From assembly GCF_006345805.1 (NCBI RefSeq), contig NC_043014.1:37634001-37698000 (forward strand): a stretch of 64,000 nt of DNA. The letters are read 5' to 3'. A model generated the notes under the pieces. The model searched no databases, was not told the origin of the DNA, and saw only the letters and a program-made list of their open reading frames with translations. The translations under genes and the position numbers were made by a program. This document shows positions 727-63,994 of this stretch, piece after piece. Source of the DNA: Octopus sinensis. Its lineage: Eukaryota. Position 1 is the first letter of the stretch. Every line of letters begins with the position of its first letter.

Positions 727-1164
727 GGATCTTTTCGGTTTGAACGGCAGTTTTTCTAGCGGTGTCATATGAAATTGTTACCCATAATTATGACCCTAGT
801 ATCGATCTATTGCATTTCAATCTGTTTTAGGGTTAGGGTTAGTTAGGGTTAGAGTTAGGGTTAGGGGTGGGAGAAGGGTAACTTTTTTTCTTCACAAATG
901 TAAATAAACCCAATCTGTTTCTTAAACGAGGGACATATGCATACAGCACAGACTGGTTTTTACCTCAATAGATGTCAGTGATTGGTTGAAATTGCAGAAA
1001 TTGAAGAAAAAAAAACAACAAATATCTTACAAACTATAGAATCTTCTCAATAAAGCCAAGAGTAAAAGATGTTTTATAAACACATTCTACCAGAATACGA
1101 AGTTTAAAATTTTTTAGTTACCTAGAAATTATGTTAAAAACTGCCGTTTAAACCGAAAAGATCC
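727..1164. mobile_element. MITE with ~29-bp TIRs, 8-bp TSD and internal TTAGGG repeats (Merlin-like)
   Basis: TIR GGATCTTTTCGGTTTGAACGGCAGTTTTT and its inverted copy; TSD TAAGATGG at 719-726 and 1165-1172; TTAGGG array at 827-871. Confidence 0.9.
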
Positions 1165-11789: not shown

Positions 11790-12735
11790 CATGCTTAAGA
11801 AGAGCGTTTTGTAACCATGTGGTTTCGGGTTCAAACTACCGTGCAGCACCTTAGGCAAGTATCTTTTACTACAGACCTGGGCAGACCAATGGTTTGTGAT
11901 TGAATTTGATAGACTGGAAACTGTGAGGAAGTCCACACACACGGTCATTCGGAATGCTCACAGCAGCCATATTCCTACCGCTCTATGTCAGGCTGGTGAG
12001 ACCCATATTGGAGTACGGGATTCAAGCCTTTTCTCCTTATCTCCTCAAAGACATACATCATCTCGAAAGAGTCCAGAAGCTGGCTACCCGCATGGTTCTT
12101 GGTCTCAAGCATTTGTCTTATGAAGAAAGGCTGAAGACGCTCGACCTTTATTCTCTAGAAAAACGACGACGCCGTGGTGATCTCATTCTTGCTCACAACA
12201 TCATAAGCGGAAAGTGTAACCTCTCGAAAGAGCTGTTCTTCACTCCTGCTCCAGAGCGTCAGCTGCGGGGTCACTCCGAAAAGCTCTATCTGCGACGATT
12301 TCATCTCAATCGAAGGAGAGGGGCTTTCTCTGTCCGGGTTGTGGATCCGTGGAATAAGCTGCCGGACGAGATGGTGAAGATGCCGAAGACCGCTCGGTTC
12401 AAAGTCTCCCTTGACCTCAAATGGTCTGAACTCTTTACATAAACACCACCTTCTACATAACTCCATGTCCTCCTACATGGCCTTGCTTTTTGAGCCAAAA
12501 AATTAACTTAACTTAACTTAACACACACACACACACATATGGGAGGCGGGCGTTTCTTTGTTTTCGTCCCCACATCGCTTGACAACCGGTGTTGATTTGT
12601 TTACGTCCTTGAAATTTAGCAGTTCGTCAAAAGAGACCGCTGGAATAAGTACTGAGCCGATTTCTACAGCTAAATTCTTCAAGAGCGGTGCCCCAACATG
12701 GCCACTGTCCAGTGACTGAAACGAGTAAAAGAATA
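11790..12735 (+). mobile_element. Diverged family A SINE split by a CR1 insertion
   Basis: Left arm ~11790-11940 and right arm ~12525-12735; the break lies in the central (CA)n. Confidence 0.75.
11942..12522 (+). mobile_element. 5'-truncated CR1-clade LINE (RT C-terminus, 3' UTR, (TTAAC)n tail)
   Basis: ORF 11954-12442: LVRPILEYG, LERVQKLATRMV, LSYEERLKTLDLYSLEKRRRRGDLI, LRGHSEKL, FSVRVVDPWNKLP. Confidence 0.92.
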
Positions 12736-13949: not shown

Positions 13950-14500
13950 ATGCTAGAGATGATCACGATACCCGGGGCTATAAAAATCTGCAAGACCTTC
14001 TTAAGATTTAAAGGATAGTGGTTTTTAGAAGATACTTTCTTTCACAGCCTTAGTACCAAGTAGTTGGTTGGTCAAAGTTTATTCTAAATTAAAAGGAGAA
14101 AGAGAACGAAGGCATTACGCATGTGATTAGCAGTTGTCCTAAAATGTCGTCACGGTACTACCTCCCTATGCGGCACGATGTTGTTGCTAAAACAATTTAC
14201 GATGCCATCCGCAAAAAAGACTGTCTTGAAATAAACTTAGAAAATCCACCTGTTATAGAATACATTCGTAAACACCAACTCAAGGAATATTGGTGGAATA
14301 TTCCCATTAAAACTTCTGTCAAATGTAAGCATAACATGCCGGATATTGTTATTTGGGACAGAGGGGCAAAGGTATGTACCATCATAGAGGTCATCTGCCC
14401 TGCTGATATAAACATCTCTTTGAAAATCAAAGAAAAAGAGGATATCTATGGACAACTGCTTCGAAACCTCCAGCTTCTATATCCAAACTATGAATTCGTA
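13950..14500 (+). pseudogene. R4/Dong-type LINE fragment: zinc-knuckle remnant and restriction-like endonuclease domain
   Basis: HVISSCP..RHDVV, HNMPDIVIWDR, IIEVICPAD, KIKEKEDIY (PD-(D/E)xK REL signature); ORF-end motif KICKTFLRFK lies upstream at ~13980. Confidence 0.85.
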
Positions 14501-14649
14501 TTCATACCAAGAAGCTTAATCAATGTTGTTATCGTGCAATGCCTGTGCAAGAAGATTTTTTTTTTAAGTGAAGAAAGGCTGTGCACTGAGTCAATCCCAC
14601 TCACTAAGCAACAGCAGCCATAATCCGAAAAGAAGAACAAGTCAACATC

Positions 14650-15008: not shown

Positions 15009-15023
15009 ACATACATACATACA

Positions 15024-15055
<32 letters not shown>

Positions 15056-16267
15056 CATACAATTATTATCCTGTTGACGTCTTAATTCCAACTGGGGCTG
15101 GAAAGTGGCTCCTTATTGGTGAGAAATTTCAAAGAAACGTAAAACCAGAAAAAAAACCCACATACGCACGCATGCACGCGCTCACGGACCCCGCCCCCAC
15201 ACATACACACACACAAACAGTTGCGTACATCTGAGATAAGAAATATTTCTGCTTTATGTAACTAATGAAAGTCACAATCTGGTTTGATGAAATAAAATAT
15301 ATGAATATACACCCGCACCACCACCACCACCACCACCACCACCACAATCAGCACCACCTCCACCCCCGCCATATCATATTTATGTATTTATTTATTTATT
15401 TATTTATTATTTTGAAACGAGATATTACGTGTGAATGTTCCGCCTACCCGCCGCCTACTCGCCCCCGCAATGTAAACTTAAAAAAAAGAAAAAAATAATG
15501 TCACACATGCATATAATAAAAGAGTACATTCCCAAGCTAAGACATAACCAGTTGTTTACAGAGTAAATCCCAGGATTTTCAGGGTATATACACAGGTGTC
15601 ATGCACTGAAGAGGGTAGTAAAGAAAAGTTGCGCCGCCTATGCTTGCAAGAAGTACTCTTTCAGTACAGTTTCTGGCGATTCGTTTACAGCTGACGCAAA
15701 TATTCATCGAATTATTGCTATAAACTTTGATCGAACTTACTTTTTCATTAAAGGTATTCTTGCTGTGGTTATTGCGGTTTTTATCTTTTGTTCCAGGTAC
15801 GGTGATTCTATGTACAGTAGCAGAATTAGCGTGGTGATGGAAGGAGGAGTTGTTCGCTCTGGTCGACACTTTTATGGAAGCGGCAATTTGGGGTCTGCTG
15901 TATAAGCCTGCATAGGCTCGGGAGCCCGAGGGCCCAAGGGCCCGGGGCGGGGAAGCGTTAAACTTTTGGGCAAGGGTTCCCAACCATTTTGCTTTTTTAA
16001 TTATGGACCCCTTTTGATTACTGTTTTATTCTGGTGGACTCCCATAGCCATTCGACAAGTTTTATAGTAACTTCTTTCAAATTTTCCATTTTGTTTTTCA
16101 CATCATTAACTTGTGAAGGTTGAACTATGTAAAATGTTAGAGAAAGAATAAGTACTAGGCTTACAAAGAATAATTCCTGGGGTCGATTTGCTCGACTAAA
16201 AGACGGTGCTCCAGCATGGCCGCAGTCAAATGACTGAAATAAGTAAAAGAAAAGAATAAAAGAATAT

Positions 16268-22431: not shown

Positions 22432-23226
22432 CAGTGGTTCTCGACTGGAGTCCATATGGCCCTCGGAAGTTCATATAAAATTTTGTTTTTAAGGCTTAGA
22501 TGCAATAAATTGGTTATATTTCTATAATATACAAAATATTTTGACAAATTTTCATACAATTCTTAACAATATTTAATCATGTTTTTAAGGCTTAGATGCA
22601 ATAAATTGGTTATATTTCTATAATATACAAAATATTTTGACAAATTTTCATACAATTCTTAACAATATTTAATCATACAGGCGCAGGAGTGGCTGTGTGG
22701 TAAGTAGCTTGCTTACCAACCACATGGTTCTGGGTTCAGTCCCACTGCGTGGCATCTTGGGCAAGTGTCTTCTGCTATAGCCTCGCGCCGACCAATTCCT
22801 TGTGAGTGGATTTGGTAGACGGAAACTGAAAGAAGCCTGTCGAATATATGTATATATATATATATTATATATATATGTAGGTGTGTGTATGTGTTTGTGT
22901 GTCTGTGTTTGTCCCCTCACCATCGCTTGACAACCGATGCTGGTGTGTTTACGTCCCCGTAAACTTAGCGGTTCGGCAAAAAGAGATCGATAGAATAAGT
23001 ACTGGGCTTACAAAGAATAAGTCCCGGGGTCGATATGCTCGACTAAAGGCGGTGCTCCAGCATGGCCGCAGTCAAATGACTGAAACAAGTAAAAGAGTAA
23101 AAGAGTAATACAAATATAATAGGATTTTTTTTAGATATCAAATGGCTCTGAGAGTCGACTTAAGTGAAGTGGGAATCAAAGTGGTCCATAGGTAAAAAAA
23201 AAAAAAAAAATGGTTGAGAATTACTG
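22432..23226. mobile_element. hAT-type MITE containing a SINE and a 96-bp tandem duplication
   Basis: TIR CAGTGGTTCTCGAC / GTTGAGAATTACTG; 8-bp TSD TTCTACGT / TTCTACAT; related fragments near 16000 and 21645. Confidence 0.85.
22679..23105 (+). mobile_element. Family A composite SINE, full length
   Basis: AGGCGCAGGAGTGGCTG...AAAAGAGTAAAAGAG. Confidence 0.92.
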
Positions 23227-24257: not shown

Positions 24258-25260
24258 CGAGGTGCGTTCACAAAGTATCCAACTTTATTTTTTCCCGCCA
24301 AAGATAATGATACGTGGGAAAAATCCTTTGGGTGGGGGTGACGCCACCCTTTCTGTGAATGCAGGAAAATTTTTGCGCCGGTGTGTTTCGTCAGTTCCCT
24401 GTTGTTACATCTAGAGTGCGCGCTGGTCGGATTTTCGTTTTCACTCAAGACGATCGAACACATCGAGCAGATACCATAAACCCAAATCTCATCACCAGTG
24501 ATGGTGATCTTCATGAAGTCTGGGTTATGGTTTGCACAATCCAGCATGACCCGTGCAATTTCCATGCGGAGCTGCTTCTGCTGCTCCGCCAACACCTTGT
24601 GGACAAATTTCCCGACACTCTCTGCATGCACAAATCCTCCGTTAAATTGGAATGCACTGATCCTGAACTTTTTCCCACTTTGTGGGAAATAGCTCACTCG
24701 TGAGCAATTTCCTGGATTGTTACGTGACAATCTTCCATGTCTATTCTTATTTCTTTATTGCCCACAAGGGGCTAAACATAGAGGGGACAAACAAGGACAG
24801 ACAAACGGATTATGTGGATTATATCTACCCCAGTGCGTAACTGGTACTTAATTTATCGACCCCGAAAGGATGAAAGGCAAAGTCGACCTCTGCGGAATTT
24901 GAACTCAGAACGTAACGGCAGACGAAATACCGCTAAGCATTTCGCCCGATATGCTAACGTTTTTACCAGCTTGCTGCCTTCAATCTTCCATGTCTATTAG
25001 CCAAATCTTCATAGCCAGCTTCTTGTTTCGACTTGTAGATGGCCTACTTGGGCGTGCTTTGCTCTCCACTGAAGTGCGGCCATGTCTGAAACGGTTGTAC
25101 CACTTCTTGATCTTTGTTTTACCCTTGGCATCATCGCCGAAAGTCTCAGCTTGAATATATAACCGAACTTTTGGCAAAAATTTGATGCAATGTCTCTGCT
25201 CGATGCGTTCGGTGAAATTGAAAATCTGACGAGCGCACACTACATGTCTGTACTCAAAGC
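24258..25260 (-). pseudogene. Internally deleted mariner relic with one TIR
   Basis: TA-CGAGGTGCGTTCACAAAGT terminus; EQRHCIKF, KKWYNRFRHGRTSVES.ARPSRPSTS, EQQKQLRMEIA, ITGDEIWVYG; split by a SINE. Confidence 0.85.
24746..24980 (-). mobile_element. Family B SINE, Tx1-tailed subfamily, with 18-bp TSD
   Basis: TSD CAATCTTCCATGTCTATT at 24728-24745 and 24981-24998. Confidence 0.92.
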
Positions 25261-26092: not shown

Positions 26093-27486
<1,394 letters not shown>

Positions 27487-31317: not shown

Positions 31318-31906
31318 TATTTCTTTATTGCCCACAAGGGGCTAAAAATAGAGGGGACAAACAAGGACAGACAAACGGATTAAGTCGATTACATCGACCC
31401 CAGTGCGTAACTGGTACTTAATCTATCGACCCCGAAAGGATGAAAGGCAAAGTTGACCTCGGCGGAACTCAGAACGTAACGGCAGACGAAATACCTCTTT
31501 CTATTTCTTTACTACCCACAAGGGGCTAAACACAGAGAGGACAAACAAGGACAGACAAACGGATTAAGTCGATTATATCGACCCCAGTGCGTAACTGGTA
31601 CTTATTTAATCGACCCCGAAAGGATGAAAGCCAAAGCCGACCACGGCGGAATTTGAACTCAGAACGTAATGGCAGACGAAATACCTATTTCTTTACTCCC
31701 CACTAGGGGCTAAATACAGAGGGGACAAACTAGGGCAGAAAAACGGATTAAGTCGATTATATCGACCCCAGTGCGTAACTGGTACTTATTTAATCGACCC
31801 CGAAAGGACGAAAGGCAAAGTCGACCTCGGCGGAATTTGAACTCAGACTAAATACCGCAAAGCATTTCGCCCGGCGTGCTAACGTTTCTGCCAGCTCGCC
31901 GTCTTG
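31318..31906 (-). mobile_element. Head-to-tail trimer of the Tx1-tailed family B SINE
   Basis: Three bodies, one head, junctions after 31494 and 31684; one 15-bp TSD CCTAATGTAATATAT at 31303 and 31907. Confidence 0.92.
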
Positions 31907-32415: not shown

Positions 32416-32617
32416 ATCATCATCATCATCATCATTATTGCCTTTGCACAGCTTCTAACACTGGAGATGTACTACAGTATCAGCTGTTCACTACCAGTGA
32501 ACTAAGGTAACACCTCTTATTTTTCGAGCACCTTCCGGAGTATTCGAGCGGTTCCAAGCAGTGCTGTTTTCTGCAAGTGCTCCACCCTTATTGTAGCCCC
32601 TATTTGTTCTACGTACT
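32416..32617 (-). mobile_element. 3' end of an R4/Dong-type LINE (ORF end, 3' UTR, AAT/GAT tail)
   Basis: YVEQIGATIRVEHLQKTALLGTARILRKVLEK-stop; embedded in an (AAT)n/(GAT)n array. Confidence 0.8.
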
Positions 32618-32644
32618 ATTATTGTTATAAATTATTATTATTAA

Positions 32645-32684
<40 letters not shown>

Positions 32685-33186
32685 GAGTGAGAGAGCAGTG
32701 CATGCTATCAAAGTGACACTGGGGTAAAATATACGAAGCCCAGTATACCCATCATGACTACCCATCTGATAAGGGTACACCAGGCACATGCATCACAACC
32801 ATATGTGCGCGACATGGTGATCTCATATCAAGATAAACAGCACATGACCTTGCAGGTGGGGCCCAGTTAGAATTTTCTTCAGGTTGAGTAGCCAACCTCT
32901 AAGAATTCCTTTCAACACACGGCTATGATGCTCCCCAACTACTTCTACTTGTGATCAGAGATGCACATATCGTCAGTCACTAAGGGACATGCTCAACTGG
33001 TTATGGTCAAACAACTGATAAGCAAATCTGTGGTATTGAGCAGAATATTTGCTGTAGCCCATCTTATCAAGATAAAACAATGTACATGATAACACATTCC
33101 AATCAGTTAAGATCAGCCGCCATGAGAGCCACTGCCTGGTACTACATCAGGACAAATGAGAGCAACTGCCAGGTACTGCATCAGGG
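32685..33186 (-). mobile_element. ~540-bp AAT-associated non-coding element, copy 1
   Basis: Reverse complement of 63454-63994 with an internal deletion and a ~30-bp terminal duplication; followed by (AAT)n. Confidence 0.88.
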
Positions 33187-35145
33187 GGCTTTGATCAACT
33201 TGGATCAGAGTAAAGCCTTCGATAGGGTCGACCATCGGTACCTGGCAGCTGTCCTCAAGGCAGCCGGCTTCGGTCCAGTCTTCCGCGGGTGGATCGCTGC
33301 TTTATACAGCAACATCTGCTCGGTGATACGGGTGAACGGTCACCTTTCGGAACCGTTCGACATCTCGCGTTCGGTCCGCCAAGGATGCCCTCTCTCCTCC
33401 CTCTTGTACATTTTGACTCTCGAGCCATTACTGCGCAAGTTGGAGGCTTTGAGGGGCATCCCGCGCGATCTAGGAGGCGGAAACAGCGTGTCTGCTTATG
33501 CCGACGACGTCACCGTGGTGGTGTCGAGCCACAGGCACATTGGCCTGATTGGCGAGACGCTAAACCAGTACGAAGCGGTGACAGGGGCAAAGATTAACGC
33601 GGAAAAGTCTGTGGGCTTGCAACTGGCACCTGGAGAGGCAAGCCCATGCCGTCCAACAGCGTCGTAGGGCGCTGGACAGACGGACCCGTTAAACTGCTCG
33701 GGGTCTGGTTCGGTCCGGACCTCCAGGTGGATAAGAACTGGGAAGAGGTGACGAGCAGGGTGGCACGTCTCACCCAGAAATGGGCCGAGAGGAAGCTGTC
33801 CCTGAAAGGTCGAGCGGAGGTGGCGAATGCGTACATCGCATCCGTCATCTATTACCGCTTGACCGTCGTCCCTTGTCCCGACCGCTGGTTGGCCAAGCTG
33901 GTACGCCTGCTCTTCGACTTTTTGTGGAAGGGTCAGGTGCCACTGGTCAGGCGATCCATCTGCTGTCAACGACCGCTGAACGGAGGCCTTGGAATGCCGT
34001 GGTTGCTGTTGCGCAGACATGCGCTCAGGCTGCGGCATCTCAAGCGCTTCCTAGACGGTGAACAGGTGTGGTCGTCTTTTGTCAGACGCGATTTTCCGCA
34101 GCTCGTCTCTTTGACGGAGCTGCAGACCTGGATCAAACGTAGACCGAGAAAGGGCGCTTGGCACCTCGAGTGCCGTCAAGCCCTCTCCGCCCTCCACCAG
34201 GCGGGCAATGCGGTCGGTTACAGCTCCACTCTAGCGTTCTATAGAGGGTTAGTGGAGGAAAAATGCGACGACGTTCTCGGGGAAACTCTAGGCGTTGAAG
34301 ACGACGAACTGAGCGGTCTGTTCGGAGGACTTTCGGGCCGGGGCCGATGGATAATTTCCAGAGGTCTCTCGCCTGGCAGTGCTACCGAGGGGCTCTGCCT
34401 GTTCGAGATAAACTCTACCGGCACGGAAGTGCCGTCAGCCGGGCCTGCCCGAGGTGTTGCCAGGACGACGAAACCGTTCTGCACGCACTCGTCCAGTGCC
34501 CGAGTATTGCTGAAATATGGGTTTATGTCGAACAGCTACTGTCACGTGTAGGACGGATCCGACTATCGGCCGAATCCATAGTGAAGATTGCCCCGCCGTC
34601 CTCCTTTAACAAGGAGGGCGAGGCCGTTTTCTTGTGCCTTGTGGCTGTGGCGAAAGAAGTCGTGTGGTGGACTCGTTTGAAAGGGCTAAAGTCAGACACT
34701 TTCCTCTTTGGTCAAGGCCTCATCAACTTTTTCAAGTTTCACTTGAAAAGGAAGATGAGGTTAGAGAGGAAAGTGCTGTCCGATAGCAAGTTTTATGAAA
34801 GGTGGGTGAATTGTGCGAGACTGGCCTGTATAAATGGACCGTTTCTCAGGTTTCGCCTGTGATTTCAAAGAAAAAGGTAATGTAAAAGGAGAAGAAAGGG
34901 GACTCTCTACACCCCCTTTTTTTTGACCAGGCTCCCGTTGGCTTTTGTAGGGTTTTTTCCACCGGGAACATTTCGAGACGTCTCCCCATTTTGGGAGTTT
35001 TTCATTGTTTTTAATAATCATTGCTTTAAAGTTTTTTACACGGATTTTTTTAACAAACGGACAAAACCCTTTGTAACCTTTCGTCCTGTCTTGTCCCTTT
35101 ATGTAATCATGCGTGTCAGCCCTTGTGGCCAATAAAAAAGAATTG
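33187..35145 (+). mobile_element. 5'-truncated Tx1-clade LINE (RT domain to 3' UTR)
   Basis: LDQSKAFDRVDH, SVRQGCPLS, AYADDVTV, GGLGMP, RACPRCCQDDETVLHAL; two frameshifts; AATAAA at 35131 followed by (ATT)n. Confidence 0.92.
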
Positions 35146-37719
35146 ATTATTATTATTATTGTTGTTGTTGTTGTTGATGTTGTTGTTATCTTTATTATTT
35201 CCGGCCTTGTATTTGCTAGGTATGGGCGTGTTTGAGTATTTGCATTTCGTTTCGTCGCGTTATTTGTATTGGGCAGTTTATTTTTGAGTTTATCTGTTAA
35301 TCTAATTAAAACTGTTTGTTTACTGATCAAGTTTATTTCGTTGATTAGAACTGGGTGTAAGTTTCGTATTGTATTTCAATGTGTGTGTGTGTGTGTGTGT
35401 GTATAATAAACTTATTTTCTTAATGTGAATTTTGTATTAGTCAAGGTTAGAAAATTTCAGAAACTTGTTTGTTTGTGCGAGCATTTTGCTACTGAAGGGG
35501 GTTCGGGGCTGTTTGTTTTGTTGCTTTCTTATTATTACTATTGGATGTGAAATTGCTTTTTTTTAATTAATCTGTTAAACTAATTAAAGGCGCATGCGTT
35601 TATGGGAGACTTTGGGAGTGTCTCGTACTGTAAATGGTATTTTATGGTTGAGTGACGTTTGCTAATTTGTGTTTCTTCGGTTTATATTGCTGATTAATCT
35701 TTTGATTATTGGTGGTGAGTGATCAGAGTTTATATTAATATATAAAGACATTTTCTATGCTTTTCTGTAAGGGTAGCATTTTCCGGTGTTCATGTTCAAT
35801 GTTATATCGAAATAGTTTAAACTTGACGTGACATTAAACCTGAACGCGTACACTTGCATGCGTGTATGCATCTGTGAATATTGTGTCTGCATCTGAACCC
35901 GTGTTTATTTTTATTGGTATGGATCAAAAAGCATGACTTAATCATTCCTTGGGTCTTTTCTGTTTGGTTACACCTCTGGAAATCTTAAAATCTAGTGAAT
36001 ATTTTAAAATTTGGTTTGATGTAATTTTCCACGCTGAATCTCAGGGGCTAATTCCCTTTTTCCAGAAAATAATTAGAAGTTTAAAGTTCGATTTAGAAGT
36101 TGTAATTTTGTGCGTGACTGCACGTGTTGTCAACAGTAAACAAATGACTACCTAATACCACATGTGTTTTAAGCATTTAATAAGCGACATATGCCTGTGG
36201 CTTTCGACTGGTTAAAATTACCCATAATTTGCGAAATTTTAAAATTGATTTTATTAATTGATTTATAGCGAAAATGAATTTCATGTCAATGATTGCAATA
36301 CCAAGCTACATCATTACATCAAATATGAAATCAATTGGAACAATAATTGAAGAAATTGAAAAGTGGCAACCAAATAGAAAGTTCCCATTCCTTGAATAAA
36401 ATCACTAAAAAGAACCCTACACTGATATAAATCCTTGAACCGATACTAGTGTTTTGAAATGTGCGTTTTGGACTTTGTATTGGTCAAGACGGAAAGATTT
36501 TAAAAATTTGTTTAAGATGGGGGATTGTGCTATTACTTATTGGCTTTATCTTTTATTTTTTTTACTTATTTCACTTATTAGACTGCGGTCATTTTGGGGC
36601 ACTGTCTTGAAGGATTTTAAGTCGAATGAATCGATCCCAGTACTTATTTTTAAAAAAGACTGGTACTTATTATTTTGGTCTCTTTTAATCGAACCACTAA
36701 TTAACGGGGATGTGAACACACCAACACCGGTTTATAATTATTTGGGGAAAAATTACAAATGTAATTTTTTCCCTCCAATAAACTGCACTTCATATTTGAG
36801 GCTCCGACGAAGCTATAACGTGTTACTCAAGCACTAAACTGTGAGCCCACTGCATCTTATAGCAGAAACAGCTGTTAGCTCATGAAGTTCGTAAGATAAT
36901 CGTTTATTCCTTTGTCATCTTATTTTATTATAACCGATCTGTACTCGATTAACACTTCGTTCTGAGGCATATCTATATTGAGTACTACACTAGGTTATTT
37001 GTTTCGCAATGCCTTAGCGAAACCTCTCTCTCTCTCTCTCTGTCTTTTTATATATATATTATATAATATATATATATATATATTATATATATATATAAAC
37101 TTACAAGTACAGGACACCACAAATAGACGTAGAACTCTCAAATTTCTACATTAAATAGGTTAAATCAATTAACCTATGAGCTGTTCAAAACGTCTTACGC
37201 GATGAGAAAACTTAGTATGGTGTGACTTCGGTCCTTGCGAGGCGCTACCTATATCTAATAAACAAAGGAAGATTCGTCTGCATCCGCACTCCAAGTTGTT
37301 GTTGCACTGCTATGTCAACATCATAAGGCTGTAGACTCTCAAACTGCTCTGCAAACAAAGTTACGTCATCGTTCTGCGCAACAGTGAACTCGCAACAAAG
37401 CAATAGTTCGAGATATGGCCACTAGGTGACAGCACATACCTTGAGTGAAGAGCAAATCAAGGGTGCTAATTAATTTCTGACGGTAGTGTATGAAAAGAAA
37501 AAAAACAACCATCATTTTGTAAGGAGAGGTAGTATCACGATTAAATTTTGGGGTAGCTGCTGTTTACACATGTTATATCCTCGATAGAAGAGTAACGTAA
37601 TCGACATTTCCGGTTACATCGTAGGAGTTTTAAGTGCGCTAGTGTCTCGTCTGTTCAGCTATATCCTGCGTTTGGATTGCAAAAGCATAGCGTTCAAGAC
37701 GTGACACGATGTTACGGTC

Positions 37720-45029: not shown

Positions 45030-45129
45030 NNNNNNNNNNNNNNNNNNNNNNNNNNNNNNNNNNNNNNNNNNNNNNNNNNNNNNNNNNNNNNNNNNNNNNN
45101 NNNNNNNNNNNNNNNNNNNNNNNNNNNNN
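45030..45129. other. Assembly gap (100 N)
   Basis: Exactly 100 N, typical of an unsized scaffold join; adjacency across it is not guaranteed. Confidence 0.99.
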
Positions 45130-57382: not shown

Positions 57383-59550
57383 CCCTTTAGTGTTCACAAT
57401 AATTTGTCAAATATAATCCTTATCTGTTCACATTAATTTTGATTTATTCAGGTTTAAATGGGGTGTCCACAATATATGCTTACAACTTTGTTAATTTCCT
57501 ACATACAGATTTGAAATTTTGTAAATGGTGCTTATATGCCAGTGGTTTATATTTACGTAATTTTAGCTGATCATTCTGATCAAATTTAACTTTTATGGGC
57601 AGGTAAATTTAATTAACAGGTGTAAAAACAATAGCATTATGAATAAACCACTAAAATTCATATTCTTAATGCATCTTACCTGTTTGATTTGTTACTAAAG
57701 CCGCCATCAATTTTACATTTTTACTAAAACCGCCAACAATTTTACATTTTTGAAGATGAGGTACATTAATTTGAATTAATTAAAATAGAGGTGTAATCAG
57801 TACAAGATTTTATTTTTTTCCCTATATTTCATTCAAGCATTTTCATTAAAAATAAAGTACAAAACTCTTTCACTAGTCAATATACCATTGGCTATGTACT
57901 CTTATAGTGTTTTTTCCTGTTTTTTTTTTTCTGCTTTACGTAACAGAATGCATCTCATAAAAAATCTCATTAACAAGTGAGACAAATGTGAATACAGGTA
58001 TATAACATACTGAAAATTAATATGTATTTCTCATTTTCACATATTATTTATAATAAAATGAAAAGGAATATATGATAAAATAATAGTTACAAAATGATAT
58101 AGTTATGACATATTTCTGTCATGAAACTGCCCAAAGCACCATTTACACAAGGGCACTTTGCAAAACGAACGCATATACGAAGTCTCTATATGATACTCTT
58201 TTGCAGTTTTTCTTTTTGGCAGCAAACGCAGTCTGCAAACTATTTTTCTTCCATTTATCTTTTCGACTTTATGAAAGTCAATATTTTCTCTGTTGATATC
58301 CATCTCAGTTAATTTTGCTTTTCTCCCAGTTCTGTGCTTTCTAGACGAAAAGCCCTCACGTAACTGAGATGCGATGTCAACCCGAAATCTTAAATGGTCA
58401 TAGTCCTTTTGTGGTGGAGGTACCTTGTGGCTTTTTACATATACAATGTATGCATTTACTATAGTTAAATTAACTAAAATCCACAAACTGTACTTCCACC
58501 ATTTCTTCCCAGGTCGACCAACTGGGTAAAATTCCCGATATTTGTCAGATTTATCAACCCCACTCATATATTTGTTATAACAAATATTCACTAGGGGTTT
58601 CCCCCAGCACCAACACCAGATTGTTCATTAGTAGACAAATAAAATCTGTCTTTTGTCTTTGAAAGCAGTAGCTAATAAATTTTCCTTTTGCATTTGTAAA
58701 ATGTTCCCTCTTTTTATAATTTTGTTTTCATTTCATGGGGTAAACCTTTACGGTTGCTCGTAACAGTACTGCACGTGTAAGTACATACACAGGCAAAATT
58801 TTCTGCCAAAGCCACTGAAGAAAAAAAAAAATGTCAAAATAGAGGTGTTGGTGCTGATGGTGAAATGGTTCAGTAAGAGACCATACTACATCATGTCTCA
58901 ATCCATGCGGTCTGTTTCCATTATATTTTTTACCTGTGTAAACATCGAAGTTTACAAAATATCCATTGTCTGATTCACAAACTTCCCATACCTTGATTCC
59001 CCATTTAGTGGGTTTGGCAGGTGTGTACTGTCGAAAATGTACTCTGCACTTACAGCCTATCATGGCTTCATCTACACAGATTTTTCTCAGGTAGATACAC
59101 AGTTTTATAACTATTAAGGAGTAAATCAATTACAGGACGTACCTTGTACAGGGGGTCGTAGTTTAGGTCGTTTTTGCCGGGGGCATTAGCAGAATCAGTT
59201 AAATGTAAATACTGAGATATTTTCGAATACCACGTCTTCGACATCATACTTGCGATATACGGATCACCATACCTTATGTCAGGACTCCAGTAGTTCCCCA
59301 TTCGAAGAAGCCGTTTAACACCAAATATAATATTGATTGTGAAAAACGCTCTCATTTCCGCAGTATAAGTTGGCTGCCATAGTGGATCGTTTCTTTCGCG
59401 AATAGAGATTATACGTTGCGCGTATTTGTTTGTTTCCTCCGTAACATTTTCAAAAAAACTTTCCGATAAAAATATAAAATAGATAGTCCAATGATTGAGT
59501 ATCAGGAGGTAAATTGTGTTGTGGACCAGTGTTTTCTGTAAAATCAATAA
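57383..59550 (-). mobile_element. Decayed piggyBac transposon with one recognisable terminus
   Basis: TTAA-CCCTTTAGTG at 57379-57392; transposase on the minus strand; other terminus not found. Confidence 0.8.
58103..59547 (-). pseudogene. piggyBac (PGBD4-like) DDD transposase, frameshifted
   Basis: YDPLYKVRPVID, VDEAMI, PAKPTKWGIKVW, LYFDIFF, YNKYMSGVDKSD, KKWWK and a degenerate C-terminal Cys-rich domain. Confidence 0.92.
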
Positions 59551-61603: not shown

Positions 61604-61604
<1 letters not shown>

Positions 61605-61673
<69 letters not shown>

Positions 61674-61686
61674 TAATAATAATAAT
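61605..61686. repeat. (AAT)n array
   Basis: Direct reading. Confidence 0.95.
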
Positions 61687-62138
61687 GTTTTCTTTATTAG
61701 CCGGACACAAAACAAATAGGGATAATACAGCACAAGGTACAAGTGAGGTTTGGCACAATATCATGTATAAAATAATTAAAAAAAAACAATTAACAATACA
61801 ATTAAACAATAAAAATTCTCCAAAAGGGGCTGTTTCTCTCAGTTACCCCGACCGCCAAGGGCACCTTAGCAGGTGCCTCTCATTTTCTCAACTCTTCCGG
61901 TTTACAAGCGAACGTTCAGAGCAGGCCTATTCACACGGGTAATCCTCGCTACATTCGCCCACCTTTCAACAAAAATACTGGGAGCAGTACTTCCCTCTCC
62001 ACCCTAATTTTCCTTTTCAAGTGGAACTTGCAAAAATCGATGAGAACTTGGCTGAAGAGGAAGGTTTCTGTCTTCAGTCCTTTCTATCTCGTCCACCACT
62101 CTATGACCTTCGCCATAGCCACCAGAGAAAAACTGCAT
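61687..62138 (-). mobile_element. Short 3' fragment of a second Tx1-family LINE
   Basis: SLVAMAKVIEWWTR.KGLKTETFLFSQVLIDFCKFHLKRKIRVER aligns with the end of 33187-35145; different 3' UTR, AATAAA then (ATT)n. Confidence 0.85.
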
Positions 62139-62900
62139 AATACCAGGTAGTAGCTCTCATAGCTTCTGATCTTAACTTGTTGGAAGTGTTATCATATATA
62201 TGTTTTGTCTTTCTGCAAAAAAATGGCCTACAGCAATTATTCTGCTCAATACCTATTTCTTTATTACCCACAAGGGGCTAAACATAGAGGGGACAAACAA
62301 GGACAAACATAGGTATTTAGTCGATTACATCGACCCCAGTACGTAACTGGTACTTAATTTATCGATCCCGAAAGGATGAAAGGTCAAGTCGACCTCGGCG
62401 GAATTTGAACTCACAACGTAACGGCAGACGAAATACTGCTAAGCATTTCGCCCGACGTGCTAACCACGGACTTGCTTGTCAGTTGTTTGACCGTAACTAG
62501 TTTAATACGTCCCTTAGTGGTTCACAATATGTGCATCTCTGATCACGAGCAGCAGTAGTGAATGGGGGAGAGGTTATCATAGCCATGTGCTGAGAGGGAT
62601 TTATGAGCTTTGAATAATTCACCTCTGGTAACATGGGTATTTCGTTCATAATCCTTAAACAACCTTTATTCAGGGACATTTTTTAGTGGGATGGGCTACT
62701 CGACCTGAAGAAAATTCTAACTGGGCCCCACCTGCAATATCATGCGCTGTTTATCTTGATATGAGGTCACCATGCTGCGCACATATGGTCGTGATGCACG
62801 TGCCTGGTGTACCTTATCAGACGGGTAGTGGTGTTGGGTATATTGGTCCTTGTGTATTTGTACCCCAGCGTCACTTTGATGGCGTGCGCTACTCCTTCTC
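62139..62900 (+). mobile_element. ~540-bp AAT-associated element, copy 2 (contains a SINE at 62253-62464)
   Basis: Colinear with 63454-63994, more diverged; followed by (AAT)n. Confidence 0.85.
62253..62464 (-). mobile_element. Family B SINE, Tx1-tailed subfamily, 5'-truncated
   Basis: Joined at CTCAATAC|CTATTTC. Confidence 0.88.
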
Positions 62901-62910
62901 TTGTTTTTTA

Positions 62911-62959
<49 letters not shown>

Positions 62960-63072
62960 CAACAACAACACCTGTAATGTACACAACACAGAAGGGCAAT
63001 CTATTATGATTGGTAACAAAGGTAATAACTCTAATAATAGCAATAATAACGACAACAACAACAATAATAATC

Positions 63073-63255
63073 CTTTCTACTATAGGCATAAGGCCTAGAA
63101 TTTTGGGGTAGGGGACCAGTCGATTACATCGACCTCAGTGCGTAGCTGGTACTTAGTTTCAACTCGACAGCATTTGAGCTCAGAACCGTGAGACAGAAGA
63201 AATACCACTAAGCATTTCGCCGGGCGTGCTAACGATTCTGCCAGCTCGCCGCCTT
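63073..63255 (-). mobile_element. Family B SINE (common tail)
   Basis: Head AAGGCGGCGAGCTGGCAGAATCGTTAGCACGCCCGGCG on the minus strand. Confidence 0.85.
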
Positions 63256-63453
<198 letters not shown>

Positions 63454-63994
63454 AATACCCTGATGCAGTACCAGGCAGTGGCTCTCATGGCTTCTGATCT
63501 TAACTGATTGGAAGTGTCACCATGTACATTGTTTTGTCTTGGTATAAAAGATGGGCTACAGCAAATATTCTGCTCAATACTATAGATTTGCTTGTCAGTT
63601 GTTTGACCTTAACCATAGTGGCTGACGACATGTGCATCTCTGACCACGTGCAGAAGTAGTGGGGGAGCATCATAGCCGTGTGTTGAAAGGAATTCTTGGA
63701 GGTTGGGATATTTCATCTTTGGAAACATGGGTGGTTCGTTGAACATCCTTAAACAATCCTTATTCATGGACTTTTGAGCGGGATGGGCTGCTCGACCTGA
63801 AGAAAATTCTAACTGGGCTCCACCTGCAAGGTCATGCGCTGTTTATCTTGATATGAGATCACCATGACGCGCACATATGGTTATGATGCATGTGTCTGGT
63901 GTACCCTTATCAGACAGGTAGTAATGATGGGTATACTTGGCTTCGTATATTTTACCCCAGTTTCAATTTGATGGCATGCACTGCTCTCTCACTC
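63454..63994 (+). mobile_element. ~540-bp AAT-associated element, copy 3 (most complete)
   Basis: AATACCCTGATGCAGTACC...GCACTGCTCTCTCACTC-AAT; triplet repeat on the 5' side and AATGAT at the window edge. Confidence 0.88.

What the first reader, a model, noticed from the sequence alone, without database searches (positions are those of the whole stretch)
32416..33186. Non-coding ~540-bp element beside (AAT)n arrays that shares its tail with an R4/Dong-type LINE
Seen: three copies (32685-33186, 62139-62900, 63454-63994). Two end in (AAT)n arrays and the third in AATGAT at the window edge; I find no ORF or pol III boxes. The 3' end GGTGTACCCTTATCAGATGGGTAGT..ATACTG..CCAGTGTCA is colinear with the LINE 3' UTR next door, GGTGTTACCTTAGTTCACTGGTAGT..ATACTG..CCAGTGTTA. 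Both lie in the same array and orientation. Established: Dong elements target (TAA)n, and R2 has short non-autonomous SIDE partners. Inference: a microsatellite-targeting non-autonomous partner of a restriction-like-endonuclease LINE with an unknown way of being transcribed; possibly undescribed.
Basis: partly seen in the sequence, partly recalled or inferred. Interest (0 to 1): 0.7.

Follow-up and report, generated by a model that had tools for sequence, protein, structure and literature searches.

The report
Non-coding retroposon in octopus AAT arrays

Summary
The three copies exist. They have no ORF, no tRNA or Rfam match, and the same end abuts (AAT)n in each. The 177-bp neighbour "F" (32440-32616, minus) is the 3' end of a Dong-like restriction-like-endonuclease (RLE) LINE: its last 32 codons match RLE-LINE C-termini, and relatives in other genomes lie inside (TAA)n arrays. 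The claimed tail similarity is weak. Its z-score is 2-4.5, unrelated loci in the window score as high, and MAFFT does not reproduce the register. A true LINE-SINE tail pair in this window gives z about 8.

One contig from public reads (L010) gives independent support. It joins element positions 1-445, in the same orientation, to the last ~540 nt of an F-family LINE. The break falls exactly where the proposed tail begins. I therefore read the element as a ~445-nt head of unknown origin plus a ~90-nt Dong-derived tail.

Two of the three copies are fused head-to-head, with no microsatellite between, to 5'-truncated L1/Tx1-like LINEs that carry (ATT)n tails. The LINE at 33185-35145 is of this type, not Dong. 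Polarity is not finally settled. The opposite-strand reading, template-switch chimeras made by the L1-like LINE, remains possible (about 0.2). A genome-wide census would decide.

The parts
32685..33151 (-). Element copy c1. It has an 83-bp internal deletion relative to c2 and c3.
   Evidence: blastn; alignment
33152..33188 (-). Extra direct repeat of the first ~33 nt of the element plus CCCCC, lying between c1 and the LINE. The last 3-4 G/C bases could belong to either side.
   Evidence: sequence; alignment
32617..32684 (-). (AAT)n array directly after the c1 3' end. It separates c1 from F.
   Evidence: TRF
32440..32616 (-). F, a 5'-truncated 3' end of a Dong-like RLE LINE. It comprises the last 32 codons (…LQKTALLGTARILRKVLEK, stop at 32517-32519) and a 77-nt UTR (32440-32516).
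   Evidence: BLASTP against P0018 gives 21/31 identities, E 2e-13
32416..32439 (-). Tail of F, (AAT)2(GAT)7.
   Evidence: sequence
33185..35145 (+). LINE1, a 5'-truncated L1/Tx1-like LINE (RT to the C-terminal zinc knuckle, two frameshifts, 3' UTR). Its truncated 5' end abuts the c1 5' end head-to-head.
   Evidence: Pfam RVT_1 + zf-RVT; best solved-structure match is human L1 ORF2p; homologues
35146..35190 (+). (ATT)5(GTT)n tail or target of LINE1.
   Evidence: sequence
61604..61686 (-). (ATT)28 tail of LINE2. It reads as (AAT)n on the plus strand.
   Evidence: TRF; sequence
61687..62137 (-). LINE2, the last ~450 nt of a related L1/Tx1-like LINE. Its truncated 5' end abuts the c2 5' end head-to-head with 3-4 nt of microhomology.
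   Evidence: blastn against LINE1: 75% over 183 nt, E 2e-31; tblastn
62138..62909 (+). Element copy c2, with a tRNA-type SINE inserted at 62253-62463.
62910..62956 (+). (AAT)n array directly after the c2 3' end.
   Evidence: TRF
63255..63452 (+). (TAA)27(ATG/GTG)n compound array upstream of c3.
   Evidence: TRF; sequence
63453..63994 (+). Element copy c3. It is followed by AATGAT at the window edge.

Best explanation
The element is a non-autonomous, non-coding retroposon built from two modules. The first is a ~445-nt head of unknown origin, either a captured RNA or the LINE's own 5' leader. The second is a ~90-nt tail derived from the 3' UTR of a Dong-like, (TAA)n-specific RLE LINE.

Its RNA is copied into (AAT)n-type arrays by that LINE's reverse transcriptase and endonuclease through target-primed reverse transcription.

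The odd 5' junctions are inferred to arise when the second DNA end is processed. The upstream (AAT)n 3'-OH can pair with the (AUU)n tail of abundant L1/Tx1-like LINE RNA, and the polymerase then jumps onto the free 3' end of the element's cDNA. That gives head-to-head fusions in which the element's terminus is constant and the LINE truncation point varies. Aborted restarts on the same cDNA end give the short direct repeats of the element's first 33-165 nt.

Shown: the copies, their ends, the arrays, the identity of F, the fusions and the L010 junction.
Inferred: the dependence on the Dong-like LINE, and the junction mechanism.
For: 1. The unit is discrete, with the same two termini in c1-c3 and in diverged copies from other reads, and the flanks differ.
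2. It has no coding capacity and no pol III or ribozyme signature.
3. The AAT array lies at the same end as in Dong-like LINEs. F ends in (AAT)2(GAT)7. Relatives in L005 and L006 are flanked by (TAA)n on both sides. Another family does the same in O. vulgaris L007. The literature reports (TAA)n as the Dong target in most molluscs (PMC7998251).
4. L010 reads (AAT)5(AAC)3 – partial 1-65 – element 1-445 | F-family LINE last ~540 nt, all in the same sense. The LINE part is 81% identical to F. The break, …GCCTGGTGTAC|, is where the proposed tail begins.
5. Of 30 end-versus-tail comparisons, only the element's 3' end against F's UTR exceeds z=2 for all three copies.
6. Dong-R4 families are abundant and recently active in Octopus vulgaris (PMC13282606).
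Against: - The tail similarity alone is no better than the best chance hits in the window. It is far below a genuine LINE-SINE tail pair in the same window, which gives z=8.1-8.8.
- L010 is a single ~1.1-kb contig from a run whose species I could not identify. A nested LINE insertion cannot be excluded, because the contig ends inside the LINE UTR.
- Four partial units keep the CTGATGCAG terminus and lack the other one: the 33-nt unit in c1, the 65-nt unit and the 1-445 unit in L010, and the ~165-nt units in O. bimaculoides gene models. By the usual 5'-truncation rule this points to the opposite polarity.
- Copy L011 has no array at either end.
- No full-length F-family LINE was available, so its 5' end could not be compared.
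Confidence: 0.5

Rival explanations
1. Opposite polarity. The transcribed strand is the complement (X'), a ~540-nt RNA with no tail of its own. The L1/Tx1-like, (ATT)n-associated LINE copies its own RNA part-way and then switches template to the 3' end of X'. This gives (ATT)n-[X' full length]-[LINE, 5'-truncated at variable points]-(ATT)n, as in U6/L1 chimeric retrocopies. The short repeats are aborted copies followed by new jumps to the X' 3' end. L010 would then be a chance head-to-head meeting with a Dong-like LINE.
For: - Both L1-like fragments in the window, the only two, abut the same element terminus with 3-4 nt of microhomology and no microsatellite, and they are truncated 1960 and 450 nt from their 3' ends.
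- SINEs that sit in (ATT)n arrays keep array sequence on both sides (L007), so a junction with no array is unusual.
- All four partial units keep this terminus.
- All O. bimaculoides gene models that include the element read the X' strand. This point is weak, because the queries were mostly or wholly X'-strand peptides.
Against: - The X' 3' end does not resemble the L1-like LINE tail (z<=2.4). The SINE this LINE evidently mobilises shares ~60 nt with it (z about 8).
- Four of six copies carry no LINE part.
- Under this model the L010 breakpoint coinciding with the start of the proposed Dong-like tail, within a few nt of 535, is pure chance.
- L008 lacks the first 16 nt of that terminus next to unique DNA.
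Confidence: 0.2
2. The element is unrelated to either LINE family. It is an old repeat that happens to sit in AAT arrays. The LINE fragments, F and the L010 LINE are independent nested insertions into the same arrays, which are hot spots, followed by loss of the intervening repeats.
For: - (AAT)n/(ATT)n arrays in these genomes hold several families in both orientations.
- The copies are old: 79-93% identity, with frameshifts in LINE1.
Against: - Two exact abutments at the element's own terminus, with the only two L1-like fragments in 64 kb, cannot plausibly be chance. The rough expectation is about 1e-4 or less even if both were confined to the ~700 bp of AAT arrays.
- The L010 break lies inside the element at a site that is not a TAA repeat.
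Confidence: 0.1
3. The complement of the element is the 5' leader of the L1/Tx1-like LINE itself. On this reading c1 and c2 are internally deleted or spliced derivatives (leader plus 3' part).
For: - The orientation is the same and the leader-side boundary is constant.
- c3 reads CAGG|GTATTC at that boundary, which looks like a splice donor.
- The element copies and the two LINE fragments show a comparable level of divergence.
Against: - c3, L010, L008 and L011 are not followed by any LINE sequence.
- The LINE1 junction is not preceded by an acceptor-like AG in related copies.
- No full-length LINE was available to compare.
Confidence: 0.05

Closest known systems
R2 SIDEs (short internally deleted, non-autonomous partners of the RLE LINE R2). 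Named from my own knowledge: Eickbush & Eickbush 2012, Mobile DNA.
   Same: Both are non-coding and use the target and orientation of an RLE LINE. Both are presumed to depend on the LINE's 3' UTR for recognition.
   Different: The target here is a microsatellite, not 28S rDNA. Tail homology to the LINE is not demonstrable at the sequence level. No 5' HDV-like ribozyme was found. It could not be tested whether the head is the LINE's 5' end.
Dong / R4-clade LINEs that target (TAA)n (Bombyx Dong; reported in molluscs, PMC7998251)
   Same: F and its relatives have an RT plus a C-terminal CCHC/RLE region, and they sit inside (TAA)n arrays in one orientation.
   Different: The element itself encodes nothing. 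The RT phylogeny of the F family was not done, so Dong versus a microsatellite-specific HERO lineage is not formally separated.
Chimeric retrocopies made by template switching (U6/L1 type), and the birth of SINEs as head plus LINE tail
   Same: One partner has a constant terminus and is joined to a LINE 3' part of variable length. The tail is ~90 nt in the element and ~540 nt in L010.
   Different: The head is not a known small RNA. The enzyme would be an RLE LINE rather than L1.
Twin priming in L1 (5'-inverted insertions)
   Same: Two retro-copied segments meet 5'-to-5' with microhomology.
   Different: The two arms here come from different elements, whose tails are complementary microsatellites. 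They are not from one RNA.
Tx1-group L1 LINEs with microsatellite association (Kibi, Koshi). Named from my own knowledge: Kojima & Fujiwara 2004.
   Same: LINE1 and LINE2 are L1/Tx1-like (RVT_1 + zf-RVT; relatives carry an APE domain) and end in a microsatellite, (ATT)n.
   Different: True target specificity of this octopus family was not shown. The Argonauta relative has no (ATT)n tail.

Membership tests
Non-autonomous partner of an RLE LINE (SIDE-like or stringent-SINE-like) | No coding capacity | tested here: met
   Stops in all six frames of all three copies
Non-autonomous partner of an RLE LINE (SIDE-like or stringent-SINE-like) | Discrete unit with fixed 5' and 3' termini in copies with different flanks | tested here: met
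   c1-c3; L010 and L011
Non-autonomous partner of an RLE LINE (SIDE-like or stringent-SINE-like) | Same target and orientation as the LINE | tested here: met
   3 of 3 window copies have AAT units after the same end, as do F, L005, L006 and L007. Elsewhere the picture is mixed: L013 has a degenerate AAT-like tail and L011 has none.
Non-autonomous partner of an RLE LINE (SIDE-like or stringent-SINE-like) | 3' end homologous to the LINE 3' UTR | tested here: inconclusive
   z=2.1-4.5; equalled by unrelated loci; MAFFT register differs. The positive control, SINE against the L1-like LINE tail, gives z about 8.
Non-autonomous partner of an RLE LINE (SIDE-like or stringent-SINE-like) | Intermediate or sister forms that join the element to LINE sequence in the same sense | tested here: met
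   One contig, L010: element 1-445 joined to the F-family LINE's last ~540 nt
Non-autonomous partner of an RLE LINE (SIDE-like or stringent-SINE-like) | 5' end shared with the LINE, or a 5' self-cleaving ribozyme | tested here: inconclusive
   No HDV-like or hammerhead hit at E<=10. No full-length F-family LINE was available to compare.
R4/Dong-clade LINE (for fragment F) | RT followed by a C-terminal CCHC and PD-(D/E)xK restriction-like endonuclease | tested here: inconclusive
   F holds only the last 32 codons. Proteins with the same C-terminus carry CCHC, RHD, RRPDI…IIDVA and, upstream, RT motifs.
R4/Dong-clade LINE (for fragment F) | Insertion in (TAA)n in one orientation | tested here: met
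   F, L005, L006 and L007; PMC7998251
R4/Dong-clade LINE (for fragment F) | RT phylogeny within the R4 clade | not tested
SINE with a pol III head | Head derived from tRNA, 5S, 7SL or snRNA, with internal promoter boxes | tested here: not met
   ARAGORN found none; Rfam found none; there are internal TTTT runs on both strands
L1/Tx1-type LINE (for 33185-35145 and 61687-62137) | L1-type RT with a C-terminal zinc knuckle and an APE endonuclease; no RLE | tested here: met
   RVT_1 + zf-RVT; L1 ORF2p E 5e-21 over 276 residues against R2 6e-14 over 145 residues; relatives with Exo_endo_phos
Twin-priming L1 inversion | Both arms derive from one LINE RNA | tested here: not met
   The element has no similarity to the LINE

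The most novel reading that the evidence does not exclude
Retroelements whose RNAs end in complementary microsatellites co-integrate at a single break in an AAT/ATT array. One group is (AAU)n-tailed: the Dong-type LINE and this element. The other is (AUU)n-tailed: L1/Tx1-type LINEs and SINEs. Each DNA end primes one RNA, and the polymerase jumps between the two products. The result is cross-family head-to-head fusions as a regular outcome.
Probability: 0.2. Interest if true: 0.7.

Novelty: new variant of a known kind. Interest (0 to 1): 0.5.

Why it matters
RLE LINEs are known to have non-autonomous partners only for rDNA-specific R2, as far as I know. A microsatellite-resident partner with a non-tRNA head would extend that idea to the Dong/R4 lineage, which is among the most recently active LINE groups in octopus genomes. 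About 900 recently active SINE families there remain unclassified (PMC13282606). The head-to-head fusions, if they recur genome-wide, would give a natural record of how the second DNA end is handled during target-primed reverse transcription. That step is poorly understood. The practical consequence is modest: better repeat annotation, and some caution, because octopus gene models already use this element as exons.

Tried and rejected
- **Known RNA or ribozyme head.** Rfam at gathering threshold on the whole window, and at E<=10 on both loci, gave only noise. ARAGORN found nothing.
- **F as the UTR of the L1-like LINE next door.** There is no similarity. One orientation gave z=3.4 by chance, which calibrates how easily such scores arise.
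- **The element sharing a tail with the L1-like LINE or with the O. vulgaris Dong-like family of L007.** It does not.
- **Structural conservation of the tail.** F and c1 both fold an ATACTG…CAGTGT hairpin, but c2 and c3 do not keep it, and the z-scores are -2.2 to +0.7. I dropped this line.
- **More copies from public collections.** Two exact-pattern scans of metagenome contigs and one of prokaryotic genomes gave nothing but a chance 21-mer. The O. bimaculoides gene models were not on record.
- **The RLE ORF at 14123-14623 as the partner LINE.** It belongs to a different subgroup, with a …GTVKICKTFLKF C-terminus. The sequence after it runs into an (ACAT)n array, not (AAT)n.
- **The 20-nt inverted repeat** between the element's 5' end and the LINE1 RT region. 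I judged it most likely chance.

Full report
**Source.** The window is octopus DNA.
- Peptides translated from the element hit only Octopus bimaculoides proteins.
- An RLE ORF in the window is 73% identical to an O. vulgaris protein.
- A repeat at one end of an O. vulgaris locus has many copies across the window at 84-89% identity.

**The observation.** Self-blastn and MAFFT confirm three copies of a ~535-nt unit.
- c1 lies on the minus strand at 32685-33151. A further 33-nt direct repeat of its own first bases reaches ~33188.
- c2 lies at 62138-62909 and is interrupted by a tRNA-type SINE at 62253-62463.
- c3 lies at 63453-63994.
- Identities among the copies are 79-93%, so they are old.
- No frame is open. 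Rfam finds nothing even at E<=10, including HDV-like and hammerhead models. ARAGORN finds no tRNA.
- The same end of each copy runs into AAT units: (AAT)22, AATAGT(AAT)15, and AATGAT at the window edge.

**The neighbour F.** The 177 bp at 32440-32616 (minus strand) end an open frame that reads …YVEQIGATIRVEHLQKTALLGTARILRKVLEK-stop. A 77-nt UTR and (AAT)2(GAT)7 follow.
- A protein search retrieved many proteins with this C-terminus. Upstream they carry a CCHC motif and an RRPDI…IIDVA…K restriction-like endonuclease region.
- BLASTP against P0018 gives 21/31 identities, E 2e-13, and the match ends at the protein's end.
- Two such LINEs from other species, L005 and L006, also carry RT fragments and are flanked by (TAA)n on both sides in the same orientation.
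- A further family in O. vulgaris (L007, minus strand ~4150→3507) is a 5'-truncated copy inside AAT arrays.
- This matches what is published for R4/Dong elements, including in molluscs (PMC7998251). Dong-R4 is abundant and recently active in O. vulgaris (PMC13282606).
I did not build an RT phylogeny.

**The tail similarity.**
- With ordinary scoring, the best local alignments of the element to F are not in the tail and are not above shuffles.
- Restricted to tail against tail with permissive gaps, z is 4.5 for c1, 2.8 for c2 and 2.3 for c3.
- Sliding F's UTR across both strands of the window gives unrelated loci at 16-17.5 against 17 for c1. Neither c2 nor c3 reaches the top 40.
- An unrelated pair, F against the other LINE's UTR, reaches z=3.4.
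- MAFFT puts F in another register.
- As a yardstick, the abundant tRNA-type SINE and the L1-like LINE of this window share ~60 nt of tail at z=8.1-8.8, with 0 of 1000 shuffles reaching the score.
The three copies are not independent, however.

The LINE body next to c1 (33185-35145, plus strand) is not Dong.
- It has RVT_1 and zf-RVT domains.
- Its best solved relative is human L1 ORF2p.
- Its homologues include proteins with an APE domain.
- It ends …GCCCTTGTGGCCAATAAAAAAGAATTG followed by (ATT)5(GTT)n.
- A second fragment of a related LINE lies on the minus strand at 62137→61687 and ends in (ATT)28. It is 75% identical to the first, E 2e-31.
- An octopus-like contig, L004, ends the same way with (ATT)27+.
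- These are the only two fragments of this family in the window.
- Each abuts the 5' terminus of an element copy head-to-head, with 3-4 nt of microhomology and no microsatellite unit between. The two are truncated 1960 and 450 nt from their 3' ends. That cannot be coincidence.
- By contrast, SINEs sitting in ATT arrays keep array sequence on both sides (window 63095-63250; L007 4293-4510).

**More copies.** A full HMMER scan with one O. bimaculoides protein derived from the element found further ORFs. Four of them led to ~1-kb contigs from sequencing runs SRR11869384-391. I could not identify the species, and the copies are 65-75% identical to the window's.
- L011 is a full-length copy with both termini, in unique DNA with no array.
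- L013 keeps the 3' terminus with a degenerate AAT-like tail.
- L008 lacks the first 16 nt, next to unique DNA.
- L010 is the informative one. In the element's orientation it reads (AAT)5(AAC)3-AATATACCCCC-[positions 3-65]-[positions 1-445]. It then runs directly, in the same sense, into the last ~540 nt of an F-family LINE: a degenerate RLE C-terminus (…KRYIEQMGFRIRKEHLQKTALFGT…) and the start of its UTR, 81% identical to F.
- The junction is …GCCTGGTGTAC|GTTAAT….

**Interpretation.** The element looks like a ~445-nt head joined to a ~90-nt LINE-derived tail. The same head end has been joined at least twice to Dong-like 3' parts of different length. That is what template jumping onto the 3' end of a head RNA would give. 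An internal deletion of a LINE whose leader is the head is the alternative.

Under that polarity, the fusions to L1-like LINEs and the short direct repeats of the element's first 33 nt (c1), 65 nt (L010) and ~165 nt (O. bimaculoides P0001 and P0002) have one explanation, which is inference. After first-strand synthesis, the upstream (AAT)n 3'-OH pairs with an (AUU)n-tailed RNA, or lands directly on the cDNA. The polymerase then jumps to the free 3' end of the element's cDNA, sometimes aborting and restarting.

**The rival.** Read on the other strand, c1 and c2 are (ATT)n-[full unit]-[5'-truncated L1-like LINE]-(ATT)n, which is the anatomy of U6/L1 chimeras. All four partial units also keep what would then be the 3' end.
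- Against it: that end does not resemble the L1-like tail, although this LINE's SINE partner clearly does.
- Against it: most copies carry no LINE part.
- Against it: the L010 breakpoint would coincide with the proposed tail boundary by chance.
- I put the Dong-partner model at about 0.5 and the opposite-strand model at about 0.2. With six copies the polarity is not settled.

**Limits.** L010 is a single short contig that stops inside the LINE UTR, so a nested insertion cannot be excluded. No full-length F-family LINE was seen. No transcript evidence was available.

Noticed in passing
window 24735-24965, 62253-63250 and other SINE copies; LINE tails at 35060-35145 and 61687-61770; L004 1900-2013: The abundant tRNA-type SINE shares its last ~60 nt (…GCCCCTTGTGGGCAATAAAGAAAT) with the L1/Tx1-like LINE 3' ends (z=8.1-8.8). 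This is a clear LINE-SINE partner pair. One SINE subfamily (…TAGTAGAAAGG) sits inside (ATT)n arrays with array sequence on both sides.
   Followed up: partly
window 33157-33176 and 33238-33257: A 20-nt inverted repeat (17/20) lies between the element's duplicated 5' end and the RT-coding region of LINE1, 61 nt apart. It is probably chance but sits right at the fusion.
   Followed up: no
window 14123-14623 (+), then 15009-15061: An isolated RLE-domain ORF of a second RLE-LINE subgroup (C-terminal type …GTVKICKTFLKF in relatives). The sequence after it runs into an (ACAT)n array, possibly another microsatellite-associated RLE LINE.
   Followed up: partly
O. bimaculoides proteins P0002-P0004 and P0240 (not in the window): Gene models use the complement of the element as exons. 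Three start at the same ATG (MTTRLIRVHQ…) and use the donor CAG|GTGGGG inside it. One model that looks like a POPDC gene ends in it.
   Followed up: no
window 31318-31887: Three head-to-tail copies of the tRNA-type SINE (period 184, 89% identity).
   Followed up: no
window 26260-27048 (+); 58103-59547 (-); 11954-12442 (+): A mariner-type transposase ORF (HTH_48 + Transposase_1), piggyBac-type transposase fragments (DDE_Tnp_1_7), and an ORF that I read, from its sequence alone (no Pfam hit), as a CR1-like LINE C-terminus.
   Followed up: partly
window 45030-45129: A run of 100 N, an assembly gap.
   Followed up: no
window 827-866 and 22484-22676: A short interstitial (TTAGGG)7 tract and a perfect 96-bp tandem duplication.
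   Followed up: no
L003 12600-12650 (Argonauta hians): The Argonauta relative of the L1/Tx1-like LINE ends …GGCCCTTGTGGCTAATAAAGAAATC without an (ATT)n tail. The microsatellite tail may be specific to the Octopus lineage.
   Followed up: no
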